Below the pieces are notes generated by a model. It saw only the letters and a program-made list of their open reading frames with translations, was not told the origin of the DNA and did no database searches. A stretch of 64,000 nucleotides of DNA from Haplodiscus bocki (taxonomy: Eukaryota). A program made the translations under genes and the position numbers. Every line of letters begins with the position of its first letter. Positions within the stretch are counted from its first letter, which is position 1. The stretch spans positions 21,824,001 through 21,888,000 of the forward strand of contig OZ296650.1 in NCBI GenBank assembly GCA_965655095.1. Reading direction: 5' to 3'. Shown piece after piece: positions 1,633 to 48,800 of the stretch.

Positions 1633-4600
1633 ATGAACATTGAATTGTTGGAGTCGTTTGGTCACACTTATCCCGAGGAACTTGATGGGTCGTTAGAGTG
1701 TGTGGCCTTTGCAAACTGTTGTGCTTTCAACAGATGGGGGACTCTGTTAGCAGTGGGTTGCAACGACGGTCGAGTGATTGTCTGGGATTTCCTCACTCGC
1801 AGCATCTCCAAAATCATTCAAAGTCATGTGCAGGCAAGTGGCAAACATTCTGACGCTGCTTGACAGAAACATTCTGCCGGACAGACATCGTTAATATTGA
1901 TGGGCGAGCAACCGTAAAAACATTTTTGGATAAAGATTATAATTTTCATGCGTCGAATTCAAAATCAAGTGTCGACTTTTGGTTGAAACATGCTTAGCTG
2001 GACGGTAAATTTGAAAAGCCTTTTTTCAAAGGAAAACGGTTGTGAAATCCTCATAGTAGTCAAATCTTTTCACCCCGCAGAAATCTATTCTGAAACTGTC
2101 GTGTCAATCATGAAAAAAAGTTGTTGGCGTTGAATGAATTGAAATGATGACTGTTTTTCAGCCCATGAGCAGTATCAGCTGGTCAAGAGATGGCAAAAAA
2201 CTATTAACAGCTGCCAGTGACATGAACATTGCTATACACGATGTTCTGTCAGGAGAATGTGAACACAAGTTAGAATTTCACTTAACCACCTATACTCACA
2301 GAAAATTGATTGAGACTTGTACATATTCCGCTTTTGAAAACATCTCAATTAAATAAACTACATCACAAGAGACGGATTTGTACAAGAAATTGAATTGGAT
2401 GGCTGTTTGGTTAATCTTGATTGTGGATTCAATTAAATAGCAAGTCAAGAATGGCCAAAATCGGCGCATCCCGTATGGCTGAGAATATTCATAGGGCTGA
2501 GTTGTTTTTTACCATTGTATTTTGGTATTTTTTTTGGTTTAAAATGTAAAGCAAGCATAGCTAATGCTGGCATTCGAAGCCTTTACCTGTCGATTTGGTA
2601 GATTTTATAACGGGGGTATCACAAAAGAATTTTGGTCCGGAGAATGTCCCAAATTTTTTCGATGATAGTTGGGTTTTTGGTATATTTTTTTGGTATAAAA
2701 TTTAAATTATATAGTCTATACTGGGGCTCGAACCCAGGAACTGTGGATTCGGAACTCTTTTTTTTACCACTGGGCGATATAGAATGTAAAAGTATAACCT
2801 GTTTTAACCGGAACCCTTCTGTCCTACCCATTTGGCCGCGGAAATACCACATAAGATCTAGGCAGACTCTAAAATTATATCGATTCGAAGTGAGCTTTCT
2901 TGTCTTGCGATAAAAAGAAGAAACTGTAATAGTCGGCGTTTCTATTTCATAGAGCGCCGACTTAAAACGCTCCCCGGTGTGGTTTTTAGGCTAGCAACGC
3001 CAGCTTATTACGATTGACGTTTTTTTTGTTAACAACTCGCCGTGATTAACTTTTGTTTCCTTCGTTGCTTGGCTTACCTTGAGTAATAGGGATTATAGAA
3101 GTTTTTGAAATCCAGTGAAATTCTTTTTTAACGTCTATGTAGATAATTGAGATCTTACGACGAAAAGGACGAAATAAAGGATGGGACCGCCGGAAAAGAT
3201 AGTTGTCTGCCTGAGCTTTTATCATGCACTAATTTTTCATGAACTGTAGACCGGATTACAATCATCCAATTTTATTCAAACTACTCGCATTTAGGAAAAT
3301 CTAATAGAATCCAGAAGCCAGAGATGGCCATTTGAGAACACTAGCTGGAAAACAATCGAGTTCAAACTTCGAAAATTACATTAAACTTTAGCAAAATGAT
3401 GTTTGCGAAAGTGATTTTTTATTTACACTATTGTCCATATTACAATCACCCATTCTAGTTAATTCATCAGCATGCAACTCCGGAAATCTACTATGTGGAG
3501 GGAATCTTCAATACGATTCTTTCAGTGCAAAATATCCAGATTTGTACTTGGAAACCTTGATTACTTTTCAGCAAGATTGTTTCCTCAAGTGATTTCTTGA
3601 ACAATACAGATTGGAGAAAACTTTAATTGTTGCCTATATGCTTTGCTGCCCCTCTGTGTTACACTTGTGCCAGCAATTATTATAGACACGGGTAGTGGTA
3701 CTTTTCCGCTCATGGACAACTATCAAGACGTACGATTCGATGAACTTCTCGTTCAACTTCTTGCGTGTTAACATCCACGTCCCCTGCGCCTGAATTTTTC
3801 TTTGTTTTACTTTTTGGCTAAATTATTGAAGTCTTTGGGATTTTTTTCTAGGCGTTGAGACAAGTTGCCTATGACAACCCTGTGCTGCCTATGAGTAACC
3901 TAGAATCATAGGTCCTCCGCGAGTTGGATTCTTTTTTACTTTTGGGAAAGTAATACGACTGGTTGACAATCTAACCATGTTCCAAAATATTAGTTCTCGA
4001 AGTTTGTCACCGAATTGAACGCAAAATTAATTAAACTTTGGGGCTTTTGAGATGACAATTTTTTGATGAAATGGCTTCAGATGCACTGGTTACTTACTGC
4101 AAGGGTTGAACTTTCATATTTGGGGACTTTCAAGATCAGAGAAAATGCTTGCCGCGAAACAGCAGCTATGTGCCATTCCATACTTTCCACGCGAAATATC
4201 TTGACTTGTTGCTTGAACATGAAATTTTTACTACTTGCCTCCTTGGAAGCTGTTTTCAAGGGATGTCGGTAAGACTGCGGGCATCTATTGGACTTCCCTC
4301 TACTTTGATAAAACAGAGGCGTCCTGTACCCAAGCTTTCCACGCGATTTATCTTCACTTGTAGTTTAAAATTCTGGGACGATTTTAGTCTTAGGATATTC
4401 TGGCTAAAAAGAAGAGCGTTCGTTGAAACCAGCTTGTGTCCAGTTTTCTTATCCTGTTCAGAACTGGAGTTTTTTGACTTCATCAAAAGAGTCTAGTCAT
4501 CTAGTGTAAAGACTCAAAAATGGTTTCTTTTGGCAGGTACTCATTTATTTTCGGGTTGTTTACTGTGCAAGTGTCAAAATTGGGCAGCTGAATAGCTTAA

Positions 4601-36800: not shown

Positions 36801-39800
36801 AAGTTTCATAATTTCGAATGATTCACAAGCAAAGAAGTTTCTGAAGCATTTTCAAATCCATGTGTTTAAAAGAAATTTTGACGGCGCTAATTTGAATGCG
36901 TTTATGGTTGTGTTTAGGTGTTATCTAGCAAACTAATTTTTCGGTATTCGAACAAGCGCTTGATTAACAGTTGCTCTCGTATCGCTCTAAAAGTCAATTA
37001 CATCTGCTATCGTTGTATGAAGTAATTTTCAGGATCTCCCTTTGTTTTCAATACATTTTTCAATTTCGGGTTTGGTGTTTTGTGGTCAGCCTCTTCTTCG
37101 CCAATGTTGACTTTTTCTTAATGAATTTTCTTGATGAAGGTATCCAAAACACAAAGGCTCCTCTATAGGTATTTCGAGCCACGTGGGCTGTGACGACTTT
37201 AACCCTTCCCGGTTTGTTCCGTTGCTAAATTTTCTAATGAAGGAATTTGCTAAAAATGAAACTAAAAGCAGTTGTTCATGTTTATGCAAATGCAGTCATG
37301 TTCATCAGTTAAGTCAAGGTGTTAGTTAGTGTTGCGGAGCGAAATATATAAACGATAGAAGTATTTACGTTTACAAGAAGCGATTGTCTAGAGGTACAGT
37401 GTCGGTCTGAGGTTCGAAGGTCAGCGTTTCGTTTCCCGCTAAAAGCAAAAGGGTTTCCATTTCTTAAGATCTCAAATATCTTCAGATTTTCGATATAATA
37501 CCGCTGAAAAAGTCTTGCTATCGATTGAAATGAATTGTTAACTGATTTTTGTTAATTGTATTGTTTTGCCAGTTTGCTGGTTTTTGCTGCGTTGTTTTGA
37601 ATTTTTTTTGGCCGAGAATCGTGACAAAACAGAGAAATGTCTTATTCTGAATCCGTATTTCGAAGCACACGAGGTCTTTAAAGCCAAAATCACAGCTTTT
37701 TATGCTAGCCATGGAGAGGTCTATCTCTGTATAAGAAGATCTTTTCAGAGTCCCCCAATATTTTGTCTGAATGAAATATTCCACCTGTGAGAGCCAAAAG
37801 TCTGCTTCCTTGTATGCTAAACATTTTATCCTAAAGAGCCTTATTGTTAATTGTAAACTGAAGCTTCCCCAGTCGTGGACGCTTCGAGTACGCAGTTCAG
37901 ATTCTCTTCGGAAGAAATTCACGGTATTTATTCAACAACCCTGATTTCAACCACCCCAGACGCCCCACCTCTCGAGCGTCTCCTTCTATCAAACATCGGC
38001 TATAAGCGACTTGCCCCCGTGGACGAACACTTGGCGACACCTCGACCTTCTCGACAAGCAGCTTCTGAGAACGAACTGGAATCTGTCACAACTTCAGCAG
38101 CCTTTCTCAAATCCAAAGATTTGCCTTATGCGAATATCAGACAAGCTAACAGTCTCTTGGCCAGTGGTGCATTCAGAGGATCCGGAGATGAAATCTTCAC
38201 CTCATCATGATTTTAAGAAAGAAAGGCGTCTGGCGAACCGTTCGTCTGGAGCTGCGCCAGATCATGAAAGAATTTCCTATTCATCGTCATCAGAAAGAGT
38301 CAGCGGTCGCAATAGAACGATTTTCAAAACATCAAGTGCTGTTTTGATAAAACTTGAACTCAATATCTTTGGTGTCTTAAATTTTGACTCTTCGATTGCA
38401 AAACCTTTAGCTCTTTCTCGAGAATTTTTCTGAAAAATCCGCGTTTTCGTTTTCACTCCCCATGATAGTTTCTCAATATCCTGTTGGTTAGTCTAAAGCC
38501 CCGATTCCTTTGGTTATTCGATTCTGCTGTTCAGCTGTTGAAAAGAGTGTTTATTTTTTTATGAAACACGTTTTCGCAAAAAAAACATTGGAAAAATTGT
38601 GAGAAATTTCCATGGTTCACATCATCGCCTCAAGTTCTGTTCATCATGTGATAGATACCTGAAGCCCTTAACAACAATCGAAGTCTAGAATAAAGTTTAC
38701 TCCATCTCGGGCCCGAGTCCTAATCCTTATGCGAAAAATCCGAGTAATTTTGTGCAAAATCTGCTTTCAAAAGATCTAAAAGTTAAAGCCGAGATTGTGT
38801 CGGATAAGAGCCTTTGCAGATATAAAAGTAATAATTACAGATCTTTATCAGTACCGGATCTGGTAAACGTGTTGCAATGTTTTCACAAACGCAGTGCTCT
38901 TGTGTATTACCAGCGTAACCGTAGGCCCGATATATTTGAGTTAGTTCTAGAATTTGAAAAAGATAAATTTATTGAATTGCTCAGCATTGTACAAGGTTTT
39001 TTTCCTAGAAAGCAGAATAATTCCGATCTTTTAAACCAGTTTAAGTAGTTACACAAGTGCCCTTGGTTGAAATGAAGAACATCAATTATTTTCTTGCTCA
39101 AAAAAAGTGATCTTTACTCAATTACCGATGAAAGCCGACCCGAACGACTTTGTAAGCGTGCCAGGGACGCTCAAAGGATGACGAGCGCCGCTTCACTTGC
39201 GTAAACCCCCCTCTTTTCCGCGTTTGCGTCCAGACTTCATTCAGTGATTGATTTTTCAACAGCTTCACCCTTCTTGTCACGGTTGCGTCCAGATTTGTTT
39301 GTCAGGCTCATACCTTGAGAGGTAGTCCGCCTGCTTTCTCTTCGCCCTACTATTAGTTTCCAGAGTTCGCTGACTGGTTGAAGTCCTTGGGTTTTGGAAG
39401 AATTTCTGTTTACGTAACGCCGTGTTCGAAAGTCCCGTGGTAGATCGCAACTACTGACAAAGCCAAAATAAAAATTTTTTCGGTCGTTTTCCCGCCTTCA
39501 ACTTACCCTAAAACTTGAGAAATATTCAAAAACCGGCGCTCAGTTTAAAAATGGCTGATTCAGAACCCGAAATAGTAAAAAAAACTTTTAAAGTTTTGCT
39601 GAGGCGGAAGTAGAGCTGAAAAAGTACGAACAACAGCTTATGGAAACAGTAGATAACGCAGGAAGGAAGGTACGAGTTGAACGCTTGTCTAATACTTGTG
39701 ATGAGGCAATGACCAAATGATTTATCAAGCAAGAACACCTCTACCATTTCGCAGATAGAAATACACATCCATCAGCATTGAAGTTTGATTTGAAAAGGTG

Positions 39801-42800
39801 ACTAATGGAAACGACAAATTTTTGGAAAATGCTCCTGAGTACATCGATGGCCTTCCTCAAGCGGAGAATACCTTTCAGTCTTCCCTCAAAACTGTTCCAA
39901 AAAGCCTAGTCTTCTTCGTAGACTTCCAAAACGTCTGCTTCCCGAATTTCTAAGACGTATAGCCAGCGAGAACGTGAACTCCTCTTTGCACAACACCGAC
40001 GCGAGGATATTGAGAGACAGAACGAAAGTATGTTTCGTCTGGCTCAACTGAAGCTAGTAGTTGACCTCGCAGGAACAACAGCGTCTGAAGCAGGAAGAGC
40101 AGCGAATGGTGAAAGAACAAGCGTTCATGCTTGCTGAACTTGAGGAAGATAATGGACGGAAACTGGCGGAAACATTGACCGAATTAGATTTCGGAGATGT
40201 GTTAGAAGCCAGCCAATCGTTGCGAGGCATTGTCTGAACTTAGTGCGTCACAGTCAGAGTGTTATCTCTATCAGATTGACTAACTGGGCAACTAACGCCT
40301 CAACTGAAGTCGCAAATCAACTTGGGCAGGTACATGGCTCTACCGTAGAGTAGGAAACATGCGTAGCTCAGGGCGGATTGCAATTGATTTTAATCTTTAC
40401 ATCAGCTGCAGTGGCTCCAGGGTTTCGAAGCAATCTCGAACAGTTTCTTCCAACTGCTGCAAGAAGACGCCTTGGTTCTCTAAAGAGGATTCGTTCAAAG
40501 GTTTTGGTATACCTAACAGTACACCGCCTTTCGTTATTGTTCATAAGCCCACTAATTCGAATCAGACATCGTTAAACAATGCTAAATACTCTGTGCAGCC
40601 GAATGCCACTCAACCGCAAAAAATACCCAATCCGGATTCTGTGCTATTGATGGCTCAGCAGATATCCACTTCGCAGCCAACTTCAAGTTTTACCGTGCAC
40701 GCCAACCTTTTCTTCCAAACCTCTCAGCATCGAGATTTTCCTCAACAGCAAGAAGTTCAGTGCCAAATACTGACACATCTCGGTTGGCTTCGCAAGGTTT
40801 TTCAAGAGCACCAAATATCACTACTGGAAAAAACAATAGTTTCACAAGTGGTTGCCGTAACAAGTGGTGGTGGTACCAGGGTTTACAAAAAAGTGTTATT
40901 TTACAAAAAAATATATTTTCAACGTTCAGTTTTTTTTGTTTCCCGATAATTGCTCATGAACTCAACAAATGAATGAATAATTGACTTTCAGAAAATGAAA
41001 AATAAATCTTTTTTCGCCGCATATTTAAGTATGCAAGAAAATTTTTTCATTCAAAATAGTGGGGACGTTTCTTTTTTTCATCAGTGTATTTTTCCAACTA
41101 TTTTTGTTTTCAACTAAATGGTTTCGGCTGTGGGGTTAGGACAACCTTTTCTCAAGCACTAGGTCCGGGTTCGAAGCTCTGTGGGTTCAAATTTTCGAGA
41201 TTCAACTGAAATTTGTCCAAATTCAATGTGTTCCCATGGCACAGTGACCGCGGGCAGGACAGCAGGGTTCAGAAGTGGTAGGTACGCGATCGAATCCCAG
41301 CTTTTATCTTCATTTTTTGAATTTAACTGTTAATTGTCTCATTTTTAATTGTTTGCGAAGTTTGATCATAATATTTGTAGCTGGGCGAAAAATGTGCCGG
41401 TGGTAGCCGGCGGTCTTGTTTTATCATTCAATCATCGTTCAGACATATTCGGCAAAAAGCAAGTTTCGCAATTTTTCAGGCATGAGCCTGTTCCTCAGTG
41501 CAGAATGGACAAAAGCCATATTGCTATAGATGCTCGAAGCCAACCCCTGACAGAGTCAAGATTTCGCCTCGTACTTGTCATGTCTTATCGGAAAAAAAAC
41601 ATCTAAATGAAACATGCTAACACTGGGTAGTGCTGTTTAATATTTGAATCCATCATCAGGGCAAAAGATTGTAGATGTTGCCGTTTATCGTTTTTTCAAC
41701 GGCTCCAATGAGCGTTGGAGGACCCACAGTTGCACCCACTGGTTCTCTTTCAACGCTTCGACTGTCACATACTGCTTATAAGGTGCTGTATTTATCCGAA
41801 TTGCTGGCGTATTCAAAGAAATACCATCTGCCCGAGTGGAAACTTCCAATTTAACGGCGATCCTCTGTAATGGCACCAGTGGTTCGGCCAGTTTAGGAGT
41901 GCCTTTGCCTCGGCTCCACTAAAGACAATGTTGAATTGACGTACCTGAAGACTCTAGTGACGCATTGCGAAAACCAATCGCTGAGTTTGCATACTGCAGA
42001 ACTATGTACAAGGACGCTTTGATGACTTTAAAGCAAAAGTTTGGGCAGCCACAGGCAGTGGTGAATGCATATTTGGACAAACTCAGCAATTTGCGGCTTT
42101 TGAAAATGATGACAGTGAAAGTCTAATCGGTTTTTCCGCGACAATCTCTGCCTCGTTTGGACTCTTTCGATGATTGCAGTGCCATCAAGATCTATCCTGT
42201 GCGTCATTCTTAGGCCAAGAAAAGATGTTGTCACCAATGTTGGAAGATTCTTGGTGAGGGCATACGGTAAAGAACTGAGATCGTCTGACCTTACTTGAAT
42301 TCAGTGACTCAAAAGACAAAGCAGAGGCACATGATAGAATAAAACTCTCTGCTGGAAAACCGACCACAGCATTCCATCTGCAATGTCACGAAAACGAAGA
42401 CCGGAAAGAAGTTTTTGGGTTCGACCAGCTCAAGTCTTACCATCAATAGGAGACAAACCCGAAAATACACCCACTAGTTGTATTGCTTGTGAAAAGAAGC
42501 ACCCCTTGTGGCGTAGTCAGGTGTTCCACTAGAAGTCGCCCACCCAGGGGCCGAAACTGGTTGCAGACCAGGAACTTTGTTCGTCGTGCTTGAATGGGCA
42601 ACAGTCGTTCCTTCCGTAAATGCACAAAACCACAGAGGTACTCAAAGCAAGGTAGCTCAAACACTCATTACGTTACTCTAATGCTCCGAAACCACCTTTT
42701 CAGAAAAATGCCGCAAAAAAAGCTGACGGAACCAAAGAAACTATGGTACGGCGAACAATGTAACTGTTGCTGCAAAGAGAGCTCTGGCATGTCTTTTTTG

Positions 42801-45800
42801 ATTGATGTAAAGAGATCTTTTTAGATAACTGAGGTCAACTTCCAATCATCTCCTAAATTTGAAAAAAATCCATCAATGTGATTCTGCATGCAGTTACTCG
42901 TGGATACCTCAAGATTCGGCCCAAAACTTGATTGTGCAAGGCACACCTATGAAATTACCGTTGATGGAAGTAACTCACATTAAACCATTGTTGCGCAAAT
43001 TGTCGGGCTGGAATTGAACCTGGCTCGTTCGGGTGGCGGTTGCCCAGCTTTTGTGGTCAAGTTGTTCGGGAGGAAATGTTGGAACCGACGTAATTGATAT
43101 CGAATCGTTACAAGTCCAGTACCCACTGTTCGAACCGATTCTTCTGAAGTACTTTTTTGTAGGTGTGGAATTGATTCTTGGTCAGGATATGTTCCAGTCT
43201 ATGCGCTCATTGGAGTATGTTCAAACCGTTCAAAACTCCAAAAGCCGTCCGATTAGCCTTGGGTTGGGTACTGAATGGTCCACTCCCCTTGACACCAGGT
43301 CTATGATCGACATGTTTCGAGGCTTTTTCAAGGTGAGACCTGTTCAAAGTTAGCCGACCAACTCCGCAGTTGATATGACATCGAGTCATATGGGGCATAG
43401 TGACGAATCGACCCGCGTTCCGCCGCCGAGGCGCCAGCACAGAAGATTCTCCAAAAAGCCACATTCTACCATTTATCCCGATATCACGTTCGTAGGATCT
43501 GGGCTGATGACAGAAGTATTTTACCGAACAACTAATTTTCCTTATTAGTTCAGCTCAAATCCTTTGAACTGCGTCTTGGAAAAGATACGATTTTATACCA
43601 GCAGTTTTTTAGACTGTCCGTGATGGTAATTCAAAAGGTTCTACCGTCGAAGTCGAGAAGTTCACTCTTGTTAAGACCGACCATCCCGATAGCTGGTATT
43701 TACCACAGCACGCGGTATTTCACCCGCAGAAATCTGGCGGAGTACGACGAGTCCTCCTTGGCACAGCTACATGTCGTAACTATTCGCTGAAAGAAGCACT
43801 TCTAACCGGGCCTGACTTGCTGCACTACTTGATCCATGTGCTACTCCGTTTCCAAAAGCAGTCGTAAGCAGTTTCAGCTGGCATTGAGGAAATTTCTCTC
43901 CAAGTAGGAGTCATTCGGAAAGACCAAACGTCTTTCCGTTTTTTTGTCGCTGCAGGATCTCAAAACTGAGGTTGCAGTGTTTCAGTGCGCTCGTCACATT
44001 TTTGAATTAAAAGATTTACCAACGTGTAATGACTACGCTCTTCAGCAAATTGCCACTGACAGCCAGTGTGAGTTTTCAGAAGCGTCAGAAAGTATCCGCA
44101 AAAGTTGTTATTAGATGACTTTATAGTCAAGTCAGACTGTTGAACAAGCAACCCAGGAAAGCCCTAGATCTCGTGAAGCTGCTCACTTTAGGTAGGTTTA
44201 CACTAACAAGTCTGTGACAAATGTACCAAGCATTTCGTGTCAACTTAAAAACATGGCTGCGAATCACCCGAAAGTGACAATAAAGTGCTACCGACCGTCT
44301 CAGACTCTTCCCATGTCTTGGGTCTCAATTGGAATTATCGAGCTGACACTCTAGTTGTCAGTCGCGGTGCAATTCCAGAGTTTAACAAAGCCATTGCCCA
44401 GCGAGTATTCCTCAGTCGTGTCTCGTCAGTGTACGACCCCATTGGCCTCATTGCTCCATAAACCATGAAAGCCCTGCTCCTGTTGAGGTGCATCTGAAGA
44501 TTGACTGGACAACAATGAGACGATGGTAAGTCATTGTTTCTGGACTGAAGTAAGGATTTACCGCTGTTGAGTCAAATTGAAATTCAGAGAAGTTAGTTCC
44601 AACAACCCGTGGAAATATTAAATTTATATACGAGGACAGCTCGCAAGACGTCTTTGGTGCGGTAGCTTTTGGAAGCAAACTTGTAGCTAAGGGAACCGAC
44701 ACAACCGCATTGGCGTTTCTCTTCCGAAAAACGCAGCTCGTTTAACAATTCCGAAGTTGGAGTTACAAGCTGCTCTGCTGGCATCCCGACTGCGACAAGA
44801 AGTGCAACGTGCAATTCCACTAAATATCGAAAGATGCTTCTTTTGTACAGACAGTACAAACGTACTACAGTAGTTACACTCGCTTGAAAAACAGTCTGTT
44901 TTCATTGCCAACCGTGTGACTGAAATTTTGGGACTGGCGACAGTTGACGAATGGAATGATGTACCGACGGCTGCCAAACCTGCAGACTCCGACAGTCGTA
45001 GATTATCTGCCACTCCTCTGTTCGAAAGCCGCTGGTTGAGAGTTCCTGACTTCCTCAGATGTTCTAACTGGCCATTTAGTCGTTTTCCTGACTTGATTAT
45101 GATTATCAAATCCGGGAATTTCGCACCCGAAATCGAAATGTTATAAGATATCCATGAAATGATGACTTTTAGGGCACATGTCACCACCAATGCATCAACT
45201 TTCGAGTGGCAAAACTGCAGCTCTTACTAGAAGTTTTTGCGCATTGTGGCGTAGGTGTTATGCTTTTTGCCAAAATTCAAGGTAATGGAACCCACAGTGG
45301 GTCTATACCGGACCTAGGCGAGCTCTTAAAAGCTGAACGCTGACTGTTCGCTCTTGTACACAGTGAATCGTTTCCTGCCGAAAAAAACGCTGTCCCCCAT
45401 CAGCAAGGCTTCAGTATTGATAGCTTTTCCACCCTTCATTGGCCCTAGTGAACTGCTTCGTGTTACTGGACGTACCAAACAGTTGGAAATCACAGGTTTT
45501 GACGTGAAACATCCTATATCACTGGATAGTCGTCTCGCTTTAGTGCGTTTATACTTGCAAATATTCCACAACAAGGACTGTCACAAAGGTGTTGATTATC
45601 TGAGGGTCTTGATGCAACAAAAGTTTGCCATTGTAAAACTTTGAACTACTTTGAGATCAATTCAGTCTAACTGCGTCGCTGTCCGTAAATCCAAAGCCGA
45701 AACGCTCAACCAGATGATGGTTGTTGTACCGAAAGAGCGCCTGGTTCTCGGATACCCTCCCTTCACCAACATGGAACGCGACTACTTTGGCCAATTCTAC

Positions 45801-48800
45801 GTGTCATTGAAACGTTCAACTGAAAAACGATGGGATCCTCTTCACTTGCTTAACTACTCGGGCAGTCCATTTTAAAATAGTAGTCATCAATGGACACCAG
45901 TAGTTGAGTGATGGACATCAAAAGGTTAGTCTCCAGGCGAGGCAGTGCCTAAATGGGTCTCCCACTAGTTCCAGCAAATGCCGATTCGACTGATTTGTAT
46001 GTTTTAATCCAAACCCATTCCTGCTGGCTCAGTTTTGTCATCGAATTCGAATATCGATTTCGACCAGAGAAATCATTGCGCGCGTCCACAAGCGTACTCC
46101 GATGCCATCTGGAGTCGTTGGTTGAAGGAGTACTTCCCGACTTTGAAGCGCCAATCCAAATTGTCTTCGGCAGAATGGGACCTGAAATCCTGTGATCTGG
46201 TCTGGATTGTGGAACCTACCAGTCCAAGAGGACACGACCCGCTTGCCCGCGTTGTTAAGTTAACTTGCAGTACTGGCGCCATTGCTAGATCCGCCGAAGT
46301 TAAGACGATGTCCGGAAACCCGATACGTCCAATTGTAAAACTCGCTCCTGTTTTCCCATCACCTGATCCTTTTTAGAATTCCTTTTTTGCCCCTTAGCCA
46401 CAGTAATTCCAAAAACACTTTTTCTTACTTCTCTAATAATGTAAACGCTGTTGGAAAAACGATTAAAAAACACATTTATGTTCTGTTCATTTTTCTGCAT
46501 TTTCTTGCGACCGGAGGTTGTTGCGACGCAAAGTATAAAAAAGGTAGACATATTTACTTTAACTTACAACTTACAAGGAGCGATGGTCTAGATGTACGGT
46601 GTCGGTCTGAGATTCGGAGGTACGCAGTTCGAATCCCGCTTAAGCCAAAAGGGTTCGTATTTCTTAAGAACTCAAATATCTTCAGGTTTTAAATATAATA
46701 CGGTTGAAAATGTCTTGCTATTGATTCAAATGTGTTGTTAGCTGATATTCAATTGTAATTTTTTTATTTTGCCAGTTTGCTGGTTTTTGCTGCGTTGTTT
46801 TGAATTTTTTGGCCGAGAACCGTGACAAAACACAGAATTATCTTTATTCTGAATCCGTATTTCAAATCAAACGAGCTTTATAAAGCCAAAATTGCAGCTT
46901 TTCAATTAGGTAAAGTTATTTTCACATGTTTTTTGCTGCAATTTTTATAGAGAGTGGCAATTGCGCGAGTTGTTCAAATATAAGGTAACGTTATCACGAA
47001 CTCTTTACTTTTGTAGATTTATCCACGTCTGTAAGTACCCAGTCAGTGTAATTTTCCTTTCAAAACTGAAGTACATCTACGTACATCGAATGAATTTGTA
47101 TGAATATTAAGTAGAAATTGCCATCGCACTGCTTGAATGCCTTAGTATTGCATGTATATAGTTGCTATAATTGCATCATAATCGAAATGGATTATAAATT
47201 TGTGTTAATTTCAGTTTTGAAAGCCGCATCAAAGTTCCGCTATGTGCGGGCGAAGCAGACACAGGTGAAGTGCATATAGCCCATGACAACGTGTCTTCTT
47301 CGCCGAAGTTCTTTGTCTTTACTGGAGTGATATCTTTCCTATACGCAATTGTCATCTTAGCTTCCTATGTCTGCATCTCGCCCACTCTTAGTGCAAATAG
47401 TCAACTAGGATACAAAATTGTAAGTTGGTCTCCATTTGTTTCTTGCAATTATTTTATCAATGCATCATTATCTCAGTATTTTCGATTGTGAAAACTAAAA
47501 TGTCAGTATTTGGATACTTTGTTCTAAATTCAAAGTAGGGCTTAAGCTTAGAAGTGAGTTAAGATATTTCCCAATTTGTTTTTCTGATTACTAAAACCTC
47601 AAACTGCTGCGGTGAGTGATGTAGGTCTATAGTTTTCTGCCTTTTCACTATCCTTTTTTTAATTTTTTAATATCGATGCCTGAAAAACTGCTTTTGGTAT
47701 TACGAAGTAAACGAAAATTTTTGCGTTTTTCAATTTCTCTTTCATATCAATTTTAACACATTCTGAAAGAAAGAATGTATATTGAAACCGGCTAATATCC
47801 TGTTTTTTCCTGATCAAAACCTGCTTTATCACTTCATCAGATATATACTAGTGGTATAGTGTAACGAACTTTTTTTGAGACATTTAGTGGGTACTTGTCC
47901 GTTTTCGCGTTCCGAGAAACGCCAATTTTTTATTACACTAACCTGAAAAATGTACGTCAGTGTACCAAAAGTTCATGCTTGTATAACGCACAGAACAGAA
48001 GGAACCTTTTTTTAATTCATCCAAAAATTCTGTACCGTAATGTCAAAGATCTAAAAGAATACTGTCGAGGATATCCGCACTGAAGTTTACACAGCGGTGG
48101 CATTCCTATGCTTCACGATTTAATGTATCATTTCTGCGCCCCTAATCATGAATATATGACACGTGTTTACAGTAATACGCTTTTCTACAAATTCCTTGAA
48201 TGCTGCTCGTCTTCATCCCTGGCTGATATCAAAAAGAATTACTATCGTCTAATGCGCCTCTGCCATCCCGGCAAACACCCTCACATCGCCACCCATATCT
48301 CTCAGCGACTCCTTGAAACTTACAACATTCTTTCTGACCAACGTTCTGGTCAAATTTACGACTGTTGCGGTTCCTCTGCAGTTCTCCGCCGTGACAGCTC
48401 TCACTTCTGCCGTATGTGCAATCCCCGCCCCTTTTACGCGTCGTGTGATGACCTCTGGACCTGATTGTCATGCGAGGACGCATTCCTATAAGATGGGTGT
48501 AATGTAACACACAGAACAAATTGAACCTTTTTTTAATTCATTTTTTTTCAGTCAGTCATTTATCCAGTCCATGTGCATTTTCATTTCAACAGTGCATTGC
48601 GATTCCCTCCCATGACTCAGCCTTTTTTTGTTGTTCATCTGTCCCTTCATTTTACATCATAGCGCTCGCCTGCAATTAAATTGCATTTCAACCTCTCCAG
48701 TGAATTTCCTTTTTTATGTAATTTTTTCGTATTTACTCGCTTGCTTTTTTACTGATGTAATAACTTCGTTTTAAATCGTACCAACCATCATTATGTAATC

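What the first reader, a model, noticed from the sequence alone, without database searches (positions are those of the whole stretch)
37377..46647. BEL/Pao retrotransposon whose two LTRs both carry a built-in tRNA-like Pol III cassette
Seen: about 50-60 bp inside each LTR (37377-37447 and 46577-46647) is a ~71-nt tRNA-shaped module. Combining the two copies gives A box TGGTCTAGAGGTA, an anticodon-arm-like TCGGTCTGAG(A/G)TTCG, B box GTTCGAATCCC with a T-arm-like stem (AGCG(G)/CCGCT), and a 3' copy ending in CCA with a T4 run about 40 nt later. Inference: because it sits at the same place in both LTRs, it was in the element when it transposed and is not a later SINE insertion. Established: plant Cassandra TRIMs carry 5S rRNA Pol III promoters in their LTRs. 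I do not know of a tRNA-type equivalent in animal BEL/Pao elements. It could drive Pol III transcription, recruit TFIIIC as an anti-silencing insulator, or produce a primer or decoy RNA.
Basis: partly seen in the sequence, partly recalled or inferred. Interest (0 to 1): 0.8.

Follow-up and report, generated by a model that had tools for sequence, protein, structure and literature searches.

The report
tRNA-derived promoter block inside BEL/Pao LTRs
Both end-repeats of an old, broken BEL/Pao retrotransposon carry a decayed piece of tRNA-gene promoter (A box, B box, right spacing) that the whole lineage, including young full-length relatives, has kept for a long time, which extends a feature so far described only in miniature non-coding elements to full-size ones.

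Summary
The case rests on the family.

The element (37330-46904, 9.6 kb) is a true BEL/Pao insertion with a 5-bp target duplication, PBS, PPT and DUF1759, Peptidase_A17 and DUF5641 remnants. Its LTRs are 80-85% alike.

All 30 integrase-linked LTRs sampled in this genome carry a homologous block about 46 nt into the LTR. They belong to two deeply diverged lineages. The genome holds about 1,800 pattern matches above control.

Between the lineages the A and B boxes are conserved (95th and 87th percentile of LTR windows), the spacer is not, and the spacing stays tRNA-like. A T-run usually follows.

It is not a tRNA. Rfam, ARAGORN and RNAalifold find nothing.

In another assembly, a full-length relative has near-identical LTRs and long ORFs, and both its LTRs carry a perfect B box. 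Three related families lack the block.

The closest known case is Helenus (Kojima 2024), which is a miniature non-coding element, so this is a new variant. Pol III or TFIIIC use could not be tested because no RNA runs exist.

The scan had already found the same thing twice on other DNA of this genome.

The parts
37325..37329 (+). 5' target-site duplication GTTAG
   Evidence: Matches ATTAG after the 3' LTR in 4 of 5 positions. The young relative L099 has a perfect 5-bp TSD, CCTGG.
37330..37702 (+). 5' LTR (TGTTGCG...CAGCTTTTTA; family end ...CTTTTCA)
   Evidence: nhmmer with the family LTR profile covers 37330-37700, E 1.5e-98. It is 80-85% identical to the 3' LTR.
37377..37447 (+). Left tRNA-derived block: A-box-like 37384-37394 (TTGTCTAGAGG) and decayed B box 37426-37436 (GTTTCGTTTCC)
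   Evidence: The module profile hits 37372-37443, E 9e-18.
37513..37523 (+). TCTTGCTATCG, the most conserved LTR block between lineages; role unknown
   Evidence: It is the top 11-column window, with between-lineage identity 0.83.
37703..37719 (+). Primer-binding site remnant TGCTAGCCATGGAGAGG (family: TGGTGGCCATAGAGAGG)
   Evidence: The same motif follows the LTR end in L007, L009, L012, L013, L018 and L025 and in L099.
41935..42123 (+). gag remnant (DUF1759, weak)
   Evidence: Pfam PF03564, E 0.006, below the curated cut-off.
44691..44870 (+). pol remnant, Pao retrotransposon peptidase family (Peptidase_A17)
   Evidence: Pfam PF05380, E 3e-7, 31 bits against a cut-off of 22.3.
46035..46373 (+). 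Integrase C-terminal tail (DUF5641)
   Evidence: Pfam PF18701, E 9.3e-15. It has 815 first-look relatives in the genome.
46509..46518 (+). Polypurine tract remnant GACCGGAGGT (family: GGGCCCGGAGGA)
   Evidence: It is conserved immediately before every 3' LTR.
46519..46904 (+). 3' LTR
   Evidence: nhmmer covers 46519-46904, E 3.7e-91.
46577..46647 (+). Right tRNA-derived block: A-box-like 46584-46594 (TGGTCTAGATG) and B box 46626-46636 (AGTTCGAATCC)
   Evidence: The module profile hits 46571-46643, E 2e-18.
46905..46909 (+). 3' target-site duplication ATTAG

Best explanation
The window holds an old, coding-dead, full-length BEL/Pao LTR retrotransposon. About 46 nt inside each LTR sits a block of about 70 nt that descends from a tRNA gene or a tRNA-derived SINE head.

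The block keeps only the two internal Pol III promoter boxes at tRNA-like spacing. The A box is TRGYNNARNGG-like and the B box is GGTTCGANNCC, with an A-to-B start distance of 42-44 nt. A T-run usually follows. The cloverleaf is gone.

Shown here: the block is an inherited, lineage-wide feature of a large BEL/Pao clade, not an insertion into this copy.

Inferred: it lies in distal U3, and a poly(A) signal (AATAAA or TATAAA) lies 35-65 nt before the LTR end. This is read from the sequence and was not mapped.

Inferred mechanism: in active elements the block works at the DNA level as a binding site for TFIIIC, and possibly for Pol III. That would either make a short Pol III transcript of about 95-110 nt, or keep the LTR's downstream Pol II promoter in open, insulated chromatin.

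My odds are about 0.85 for the identity and descent part and about 0.45 for a Pol III/TFIIIC role. In the window's two copies the boxes and the proximal T-run have decayed, so they are almost certainly inert.
For: Element anatomy.

Lineage-wide presence:
- All 30 top genomic LTR copies carry the block in register.
- All 30 LTRs lying downstream of DUF5641 hits carry it: 11 of this family and 19 of sister families with 52-61% integrase-tail identity.
- The pattern GTCTAGNGGTA-N27-31-GGTTCG gives 100 genomic hits against 1 control. With up to 2 mismatches it gives 2,121 against 317.

Signs of selection in the active lineages:
- Between the two lineages, mean LTR column identity is 0.48.
- The A box scores 0.67 (95th percentile of 11-column windows) and the B box 0.62 (87th percentile). 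The spacer scores only 0.37, and the 29-nt gap is unchanged.
- Within a family the boxes sit barely above the LTR mean, so inserted copies decay neutrally.

Terminator-like feature: a T4+ run starts 10-29 nt after the B box in 33/39 and 14/18 copies. T4+ occurs inside the block in only 2/39 and 1/18.

Other assemblies:
- L099 (ERZ25074608) is a 9.16-kb element with LTRs that differ only at one short indel site, a CCTGG TSD and ORFs of 1380 + 423 aa. GGTTCGATTCC is present in both LTRs.
- L098/L100 (ERZ25071359) carry GGTTCGAGCCC.

Precedents: Helenus and Cassandra (PMC10886601). Pol III cassettes occur in foamy-virus LTRs and in BLV (PMC3993851, PMC7693620, PMC12498455; titles and abstracts only).
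Against: - No expression data. No RNA run holds the sequence, and only DNA-like contigs could be laid.
- No tRNA covariance score in any copy, no conserved fold, MFE z about 0.
- Similarity of the inner 29 nt to the genome's tRNA-Pro(CGG) is only 18-20 of 29, with shuffle p of 0.03-0.13.
- The boxes are not the best conserved part of the LTR. TCTTGCTATCG is.
- The T-run test is weak. The background chance of a T4 run in a wider 5-45 nt window is 0.3-0.5 in this T-rich LTR, and L098 has no nearby T-run.
- Three related families lack the block (L094, L095, L096), so it is dispensable for BEL/Pao.
- The block lies far upstream of where a Pol II start is likely, which fits an ordinary enhancer just as well.
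Confidence: 0.6

Rival explanations
1. It is a relic with no Pol III role. A tRNA or SINE fragment was captured in U3 long ago. Its box sequences survive either because they were reused as ordinary Pol II enhancer or transcription-factor sites, or simply because they ride along in successful master copies.
For: - The block lies in distal U3, where enhancers sit.
- Another LTR block is more conserved.
- Box conservation is high but not extreme (95th and 87th percentile).
- Three related families do without it.
- There is no RNA evidence.
Against: - Both boxes, their order, their orientation and their 42-44 nt spacing are kept across lineages whose LTRs are otherwise at 48% column identity. They are also kept across three assemblies, while the spacer drifts.
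- That pattern is what a bipartite TFIIIC site predicts. Two unrelated factor sites would be less likely to produce it.
Confidence: 0.3
2. It is a chance resemblance. A conserved LTR block merely happens to look like A and B boxes.
For: - In the window the left copy is at chance level, and the right copy is expected 0.3 times per 64 kb.
- No tRNA model score was obtained.
- The scan reads very many windows, so some such matches will turn up.
Against: - The majority state in four diverged lineages is a perfect or one-off B box plus an A box within 0-1 mismatches at tRNA spacing.
- A pair with at most 1 mismatch is expected 0.01 times per 64 kb.
- There are extra matches to tRNA-Pro in the D-loop and in the variable/T-arm segment AGGTCCG.GGTTCGA.
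Confidence: 0.07
3. It encodes a functional tRNA-like RNA, such as a primer mimic, a decoy for tRNA-fragment silencing, or a processed tRNA-like structure.
For: Some Helenus LTRs can still encode a tRNA (PMC10886601).
Against: - There is no acceptor stem, and the anticodon arm is not formed.
- RNAalifold gives an open chain, and the T-stem is not kept in the main family.
- No covariance-model score was obtained.
- The PBS (TGGTGGCCATAGAGAGG) is not complementary to the block.
Confidence: 0.03

Closest known systems
Helenus (TRIMp3), LTR elements with a tRNA-like sequence in the LTRs (Kojima 2024, PMC10886601)
   Same: The LTRs carry a tRNA-derived block in which mainly the A box and the GGTTC of the B box are conserved. 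The block is unlikely to encode a working tRNA. PBS, PPT and TSDs are normal. Helenus occurs in animals as well as fungi and plants.
   Different: - Helenus is by definition a non-coding miniature element (311-1263 bp) thought to use Pol III to make its whole template RNA. The elements here are 9-kb BEL/Pao elements with gag-pol, which Pol III could not transcribe through their many T-runs.
- Animal Helenus makes 4-bp TSDs and is linked to Gypsy. Here the TSD is 5 bp and the superfamily is BEL/Pao.
- The paper argues that autonomous partners 'must use' a Pol II promoter and are unlikely to share LTR sequence with TRIMp3.
Cassandra TRIMs (5S rRNA-derived Pol III promoter in plant LTRs)
   Same: A small-RNA gene promoter is built into both LTRs and conserved across a lineage.
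   Different: Cassandra has a type 1 (5S) promoter rather than type 2. It is found only in plants, is non-autonomous, and its Pol III transcripts are validated according to PMC10886601.
Pol III cassettes of retroviruses: foamy-virus miRNA units in the LTR U3, BLV miRNA cluster (PMC3993851, PMC7693620, PMC12498455)
   Same: An autonomous retroelement that replicates through Pol II also carries a short Pol III type-2 unit. In foamy viruses the unit lies in the LTR. I read only the titles and abstracts of these papers. The placement in U3 is from my own knowledge.
   Different: Those units end in pre-miRNA hairpins. Here only about 15 nt lie between the B box and the T-run, and no hairpin or fold signal is present.
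tRNA-derived SINE heads (SINE2)
   Same: Both are degenerate tRNA-related regions that keep the A and B boxes but lose the cloverleaf.
   Different: A SINE head sits at the 5' end of a LINE-mobilised unit. Here the block is internal to an LTR, 46 nt from its start, and is flanked by LTR sequence in every copy.
Ordinary BEL/Pao elements (e.g. L094 from GCA_029980085.1)
   Same: The PPT, the TGTTGC... LTR start, and the DUF1759 / Peptidase_A17 / DUF5641 order are shared. Integrase region identity is 61%.
   Different: The U3 of L094 has a CRE-like TGACGTCA and CCAAT motifs and no A/B-box block.

Membership tests
BEL/Pao LTR retrotransposon | Pol with the Pao-type peptidase family and an integrase with the DUF5641 tail, plus DUF1759 gag | tested here: met
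   PF05380 at 3e-7, PF18701 at 9e-15 and PF03564 at 0.006 (weak), in the order gag-pol-IN. L099 and L094 relatives show the full set.
BEL/Pao LTR retrotransposon | Two direct LTRs (TG..CA), a PBS after the 5' LTR, a PPT before the 3' LTR, and a short TSD | tested here: met
   LTRs at 37330-37702 and 46519-46904; PBS 37703-37719; PPT 46509-46518; TSD GTTAG/ATTAG.
tRNA gene / tRNA-like RNA (Rfam RF00005) | Cloverleaf scored by a covariance model or by ARAGORN | tested here: not met
   No hit in the window LTRs, in 20 + 19 + 4 loci, or in a 101-nt best-looking copy. Positive control: 13.4 bits at window 2713-2784.
Pol III type-2 (tRNA-type) internal promoter | A box and B box in this order with tRNA-like spacing | tested here: met
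   - Own family, A box: 0-1 mismatch in 33/39 copies.
- Own family, B box: 0-1 mismatch in 22/39 copies.
- Sister lineage: 15/18 for each box.
- A-to-B start distance is 42-44 nt in four lineages.
Pol III type-2 (tRNA-type) internal promoter | Oligo-T terminator downstream, none inside the unit | tested here: inconclusive
   A T4+ run lies 10-29 nt after the B box in 33/39 and 14/18 copies, against a background of 0.3-0.5 for a wider 5-45 nt window. It is absent in L098 and decayed in both window copies.
Pol III type-2 (tRNA-type) internal promoter | Actual TFIIIC binding or Pol III transcription | not testable with these tools
   No RNA run is on record. The runs laid were DNA-like contigs.
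Helenus / TRIMp3 | tRNA-derived sequence inside both LTRs | tested here: met
Helenus / TRIMp3 | Non-autonomous miniature element (no coding region, up to about 1.3 kb) | tested here: not met
   The window element is 9,575 bp with gag, pol and IN remnants. Relative L099 is 9.16 kb with ORFs of 1380 + 423 aa.
Later SINE insertion into one LTR | Present in some copies or in one LTR only, with its own TSD and tail | tested here: not met
   It is in register in every LTR copy examined and in both LTRs of the window element, L091 and L099.

The most novel reading that the evidence does not exclude
A whole clade of autonomous BEL/Pao retrotransposons has kept a working TFIIIC/Pol III entry site in the distal U3 of its LTRs through long diversification and across species. 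It uses the site either as a portable chromatin boundary that shields its own Pol II promoter from silencing, or to make a small Pol III RNA. Such autonomous elements would then be the source from which tRNA-bearing miniature elements (Helenus-type) arise by internal deletion. That differs from the published model, in which a SINE inserts into an existing TRIM.
Probability: 0.3. Interest if true: 0.75.

Novelty: new variant of a known kind. Interest (0 to 1): 0.55.

Why it matters
The published view (PMC10886601) is that Pol III promoters in LTRs belong to miniature elements short enough for Pol III to transcribe. On that view their autonomous partners must rely on Pol II and should not share LTR sequence with them.

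Here full-length, coding BEL/Pao elements carry the tRNA-type boxes themselves. One copy has LTRs that differ only at one short indel site. The lineage has kept the boxes while the rest of the LTR diverged.

If the block binds TFIIIC, it would be a natural case of a retrotransposon carrying its own insulator or Pol III unit. It would also offer an alternative origin for Helenus-like elements, and it would add thousands of scattered potential TFIIIC sites to this genome.

On the practical side, such blocks can inflate tRNA-like and SINE annotations.

Tried and rejected
- tRNA detection. ARAGORN at default and relaxed settings, and the Rfam tRNA model on the window, on 43 loci and on short stretches, all gave nothing. 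At an 80% ARAGORN threshold the hits are noise spread over the loci.
- RNA structure. RNAalifold gives an open chain, shuffled-sequence z is about 0, and T-arm pairing is not kept in the main family. This rejects the tRNA-like RNA, primer and decoy readings.
- Source tRNA. tRNA-Pro(CGG) is the best of four tRNAs compared, but the match is only marginal. No source is claimed.
- Self-priming or a primer link. The PBS is not complementary to the block.
- Expression. No RNA run was found. The laid contigs only show LTR depth 5-10 times that of the internal part, and an identical 151-nt piece under a second organism label.
- Intact 2137-aa and 2126-aa BEL/Pao families of this genome. Their coordinates are not among the 100 exact-pattern hits, and the listing of the looser pattern was cut at 100 of 2,121. 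This stays open.
- Organism identity. A comparison with an ABC transporter near a Convolutriloba macropyga hit found nothing. No identity is claimed.
- Consensus. I used per-copy scoring, per-column statistics and search profiles instead. The majority line that DNA alignment printed for the two LTRs was not used.
- Complex prediction and structure tools were not relevant.


Full report
**The observation**

They lie 46 nt inside a pair of direct repeats, 37330-37702 and 46519-46904. The repeats are 80% identical by global alignment and 85% by aligned columns.

- Left copy: TTGTCTAGAGG ... GTTTCGTTTCC.
- Right copy: TGGTCTAGATG ... AGTTCGAATCC.
- The A-to-B start distance is 42 nt in both.

The tidy A and B boxes in the finding are a composite of two decayed copies. 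I scored each copy alone against TRGYNNARNGG and GGTTCRANNCC at 40-47 nt. The right copy has 2 mismatches, where 0.3 such pairs are expected per 64 kb of first-order Markov sequence. The left copy has 3 mismatches, where 4.8 are expected. The window by itself therefore does not prove much.

**The element**

The repeats are true LTRs of a BEL/Pao element.

- They begin TGTTGCG and end CAGCTTTT(C/T)A.
- They are flanked by GTTAG and ATTAG.
- The 5' LTR is followed by a PBS remnant, and the 3' LTR is preceded by a PPT remnant.
- The interior has no long ORF, but stop-to-stop pieces match three families in the expected order. These are DUF1759 (weak, 41935-42123), the Pao peptidase family PF05380 (3e-7, 44691-44870) and DUF5641 (9e-15, 46035-46373).
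- Its pol aligns at 64% nucleotide identity over 3 kb with a coding relative, L097.

**Not a tRNA**

- ARAGORN finds nothing in the window, in 30 LTR loci even at a relaxed threshold, or in six loci from other assemblies.
- The Rfam tRNA model gives no match in the window at gathering score.
- It gives none in either LTR at E up to 10, none in 20 + 19 + 4 loci, and none in a 101-nt stretch holding the best-looking copy, where a 7.7-bit match to another family was listed.
- As a control, a decayed tRNA-like element at window 2713-2784 (minus strand) does score 13.4 bits with acceptor and T stems.
- The 7 nt before the A box are not complementary to what follows the T-arm position.
- RNAalifold on 39, 18 or all 57 aligned copies gives an open chain or a 3-bp remnant. 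MFE z-scores average -0.08. The T-stem is not maintained in the main family.

**Family and lineage**

The genome is 1.5 Gb, and the window is C3:21824001-21888000. It holds at least 173 first-look copies of this LTR. All 30 that were cut out carry the block in register. The 5' copies are followed by TGGTGGCCATAGAGAGG, and the 3' copies are preceded by ...GGGCCCGGAGGA.

A search with the DUF5641 tail found 815 candidates. Among the 30 best loci, 11 have this family's LTR. The other 19 share only 52-61% identity in that tail, but have an LTR of about 410 bp (TGTTGTAAACA...GATTTACA). That LTR carries a homologous block at the same place, typically ...TTAGTCTAGCGGTAG... ...GGTTCGATCCCC.

The pattern GTCTAGNGGTA-N27-31-GGTTCG hits the genome 100 times against 1 control hit. 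Most hits are one block type with many identical copies. Same-strand LTR pairs lie 4.4 kb apart (six cases), 8.5-8.8 kb apart (two) and 1.13 kb apart (one). A few true tRNA-Pro and tRNA-Glu genes are also hit. With up to two mismatches the count is 2,121 against 317.

DNA-like contigs laid on one such LTR show 5-10 times more depth on the LTR than on the internal part.

**What is conserved**

I aligned 39 LTRs of the window's family with 18 of the sister lineage.

| Region | Between-lineage column identity | Rank among 11-column windows |
|---|---|---|
| LTR mean | 0.48 | - |
| A box | 0.67 | 95th percentile |
| B box | 0.62 | 87th percentile |
| 31-column spacer | 0.37 | - |

The 29-nt gap between the anchor motifs is the same in both lineages.

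Within each family the boxes are only a little above the LTR mean: 0.77 and 0.74 against 0.71, and 0.82 and 0.74 against 0.72. Inserted copies therefore decay like the rest of the LTR, and the constraint acted on the active lineages.

Boxes kept, spacer free and spacing fixed is the pattern expected of a two-part DNA-binding site. It is not the pattern expected of a folded RNA. The boxes are not the top block, though. TCTTGCTATCG (window 37513-37523) reaches 0.83.

A T4+ run begins 10-29 nt after the B box in 33/39 and 14/18 copies. The chance of one in a wider 5-45 nt window is 0.5 and 0.3. T4+ occurs inside the block in 2/39 and 1/18 copies. This fits a Pol III unit of about 95-110 nt but is weak evidence in a T-rich LTR. 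In both window copies the proximal run has decayed, and the first T4 is 50 nt after the B box (about 40 nt past the end of the block).

**Source tRNA**

The pattern search printed part of this genome's tRNA-Pro genes. The block shares the D-loop GGTCTAG.GGTA and the variable/T-arm AGGTCCG.GGTTCGA with them. The inner 29 nt, however, match only 18-20 positions, with shuffle p of 0.03-0.13. A tRNA or tRNA-SINE origin is likely, but I do not name the donor.

**Other assemblies**

One protein search with a 388-aa integrase ORF of the sister lineage returned thousands of BEL/Pao fragments.

- L091 (ERZ26859043) is 100% identical to this genome over 3.3 kb. It shows a 4.5-kb gag-less derivative with the block in both LTRs.
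- L099 (ERZ25074608) is a 9.16-kb element.
  - Its 418-bp LTRs differ only at one short indel site.
  - It has a perfect CCTGG TSD and the PBS TGATGGCCATAGAGAGG.
  - Its called ORFs are 200, 265, 1380 and 423 aa, covering DUF1759, RVT_1, Pao peptidase, integrase and DUF5641.
  - Both LTRs hold TAGAGTAGCGG ... GGTTCGATTCC, 43 nt apart.
  - The full LTR profile of the window's family recognises only a short stretch next to the block there, and the block profile recognises the block.
- L098/L100 (ERZ25071359) come from the assembly that also holds a protein named in NCBI for Convolutriloba macropyga. They have TAGCGCAGACGG ... GGTTCGAGCCC, 44 nt apart, about 105 nt into the LTR, with no nearby T-run.
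- Three relatives lack the block. L094 (GCA_029980085.1) has a U3 with TGACGTCA and CCAAT motifs. L095 and L096 (ERZ25071359) also lack it.

A quick FastTree of the integrase region, midpoint-rooted and with supports not inspected, puts the window's family, the sister lineage and L099 in one clade. L100 groups with the three block-less elements. This would fit an old gain followed by losses, but I treat it as tentative.

**How it probably works**

Both lineages have a conserved poly(A) signal (AATAAA, or TATAAA in the window's family) 35-65 nt before the LTR end. R and U5 are therefore probably short, and the block probably sits in distal U3. This is read from the sequence, not mapped.

A 9-kb T-rich element cannot be made by Pol III, so the genomic RNA must come from Pol II. 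The block then has two plausible roles:

- a separate short Pol III unit, as in foamy-virus LTRs (PMC3993851, PMC7693620) and BLV (PMC12498455), though here without any hairpin;
- a TFIIIC-bound site acting as boundary or enhancer for the LTR promoter. tRNA genes and SINEs are known to act this way; this is established knowledge that I did not test.

I put about 0.45 on a Pol III/TFIIIC role in active copies, 0.3 on a relic reused as an ordinary enhancer or simply carried along, and less than 0.1 on chance. The window's own copies are decayed and presumably inert.

**Comparison with what is known**

Kojima (2024, PMC10886601) described Helenus. These are TRIMs of 311-1263 bp from fungi, animals and one plant whose LTRs hold a tRNA-like sequence with conserved A and B boxes.

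- Animal Helenus makes 4-bp TSDs and is linked to Gypsy.
- The paper notes that 'not a few' Repbase LTRs have tRNA-like parts.
- It also argues that autonomous partners must use Pol II promoters and are unlikely to share LTR sequence with such TRIMs.

The present elements fail the defining 'miniature, non-coding' feature and belong to BEL/Pao. I therefore file them as a new variant of that kind, not as Helenus. Full-text searches found no paper describing such a block in BEL/Pao LTRs.

Two earlier notes of this scan, on other DNA of the same genome, reached the same reading. I saw them only after reaching mine.

**Limits**

- No RNA data exist here.

Noticed in passing
window 2713-2784, minus strand: A decayed tRNA-like element: A box TCGCCCAGTGG, perfect B box GGTTCGAGCCC 43 nt later, and an acceptor stem still pairing. 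The Rfam tRNA score is 13.4 bits, below the 29-bit threshold. An A-rich tail follows, so it is probably a tRNA pseudogene or a SINE head.
   Followed up: partly
G000 C7:23.68-23.78 Mb, C4:107.93-108.14 Mb, C11:32.11-32.18 Mb (L031-L060): Very large tandem arrays of tRNA genes with 0.5-1.7 kb periods: Arg-TCG, Lys-TTT (with Arg-TCT and stop-anticodon variants) and Thr. The first look found about 138,000 tRNA-like candidates genome-wide.
   Followed up: partly
L091 (= G000 C11:16.86 Mb); LTR pairs at C3:67193247/67197640, C3:69810899/69815310, C8:7448075/7452328, C8:64121266/64125671, C12:28356532/28360945, C12:67331348/67335760: A repeated derivative of the sister lineage, about 4.5 kb long, goes from the 5' LTR almost straight into RT and lacks gag. 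In L091 the 3' LTR is again followed by the PBS-like TGGTCCGTCGACCCGGA, which suggests tandem or recombinant LTR-internal-LTR units.
   Followed up: partly
G000 C7:17237535/17238664 and C1:71174011-71188705: Two block-bearing LTRs lie only 1.13 kb apart. Elsewhere a run of blocks has 2.2-2.9 kb periods. These may be miniature (Helenus-like) or tandem-array derivatives of this BEL/Pao clade. I could not fetch the sequence.
   Followed up: no
window 37513-37523 and 46713-46723: TCTTGCTATCG is the most conserved LTR block between the two lineages (0.83 column identity against an LTR mean of 0.48). Its role is unknown.
   Followed up: no
G000 C10:71310393, C10:80554003, C8:55222748, C4:79963251, C9:55883758 (2137-aa open frames); C6:61842162 (2126 aa); C7:8387473 (2186 aa): Several BEL/Pao families in this genome have fully open polyprotein frames, with equal scores across five 2137-aa copies. 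They look recently active. Their LTRs were not examined.
   Followed up: no
L093 9615-16000 and L100 587-2368: Satellite arrays with 26-27, 41 and 81-nt periods directly flank BEL/Pao fragments in the assembly that holds Convolutriloba macropyga proteins.
   Followed up: no
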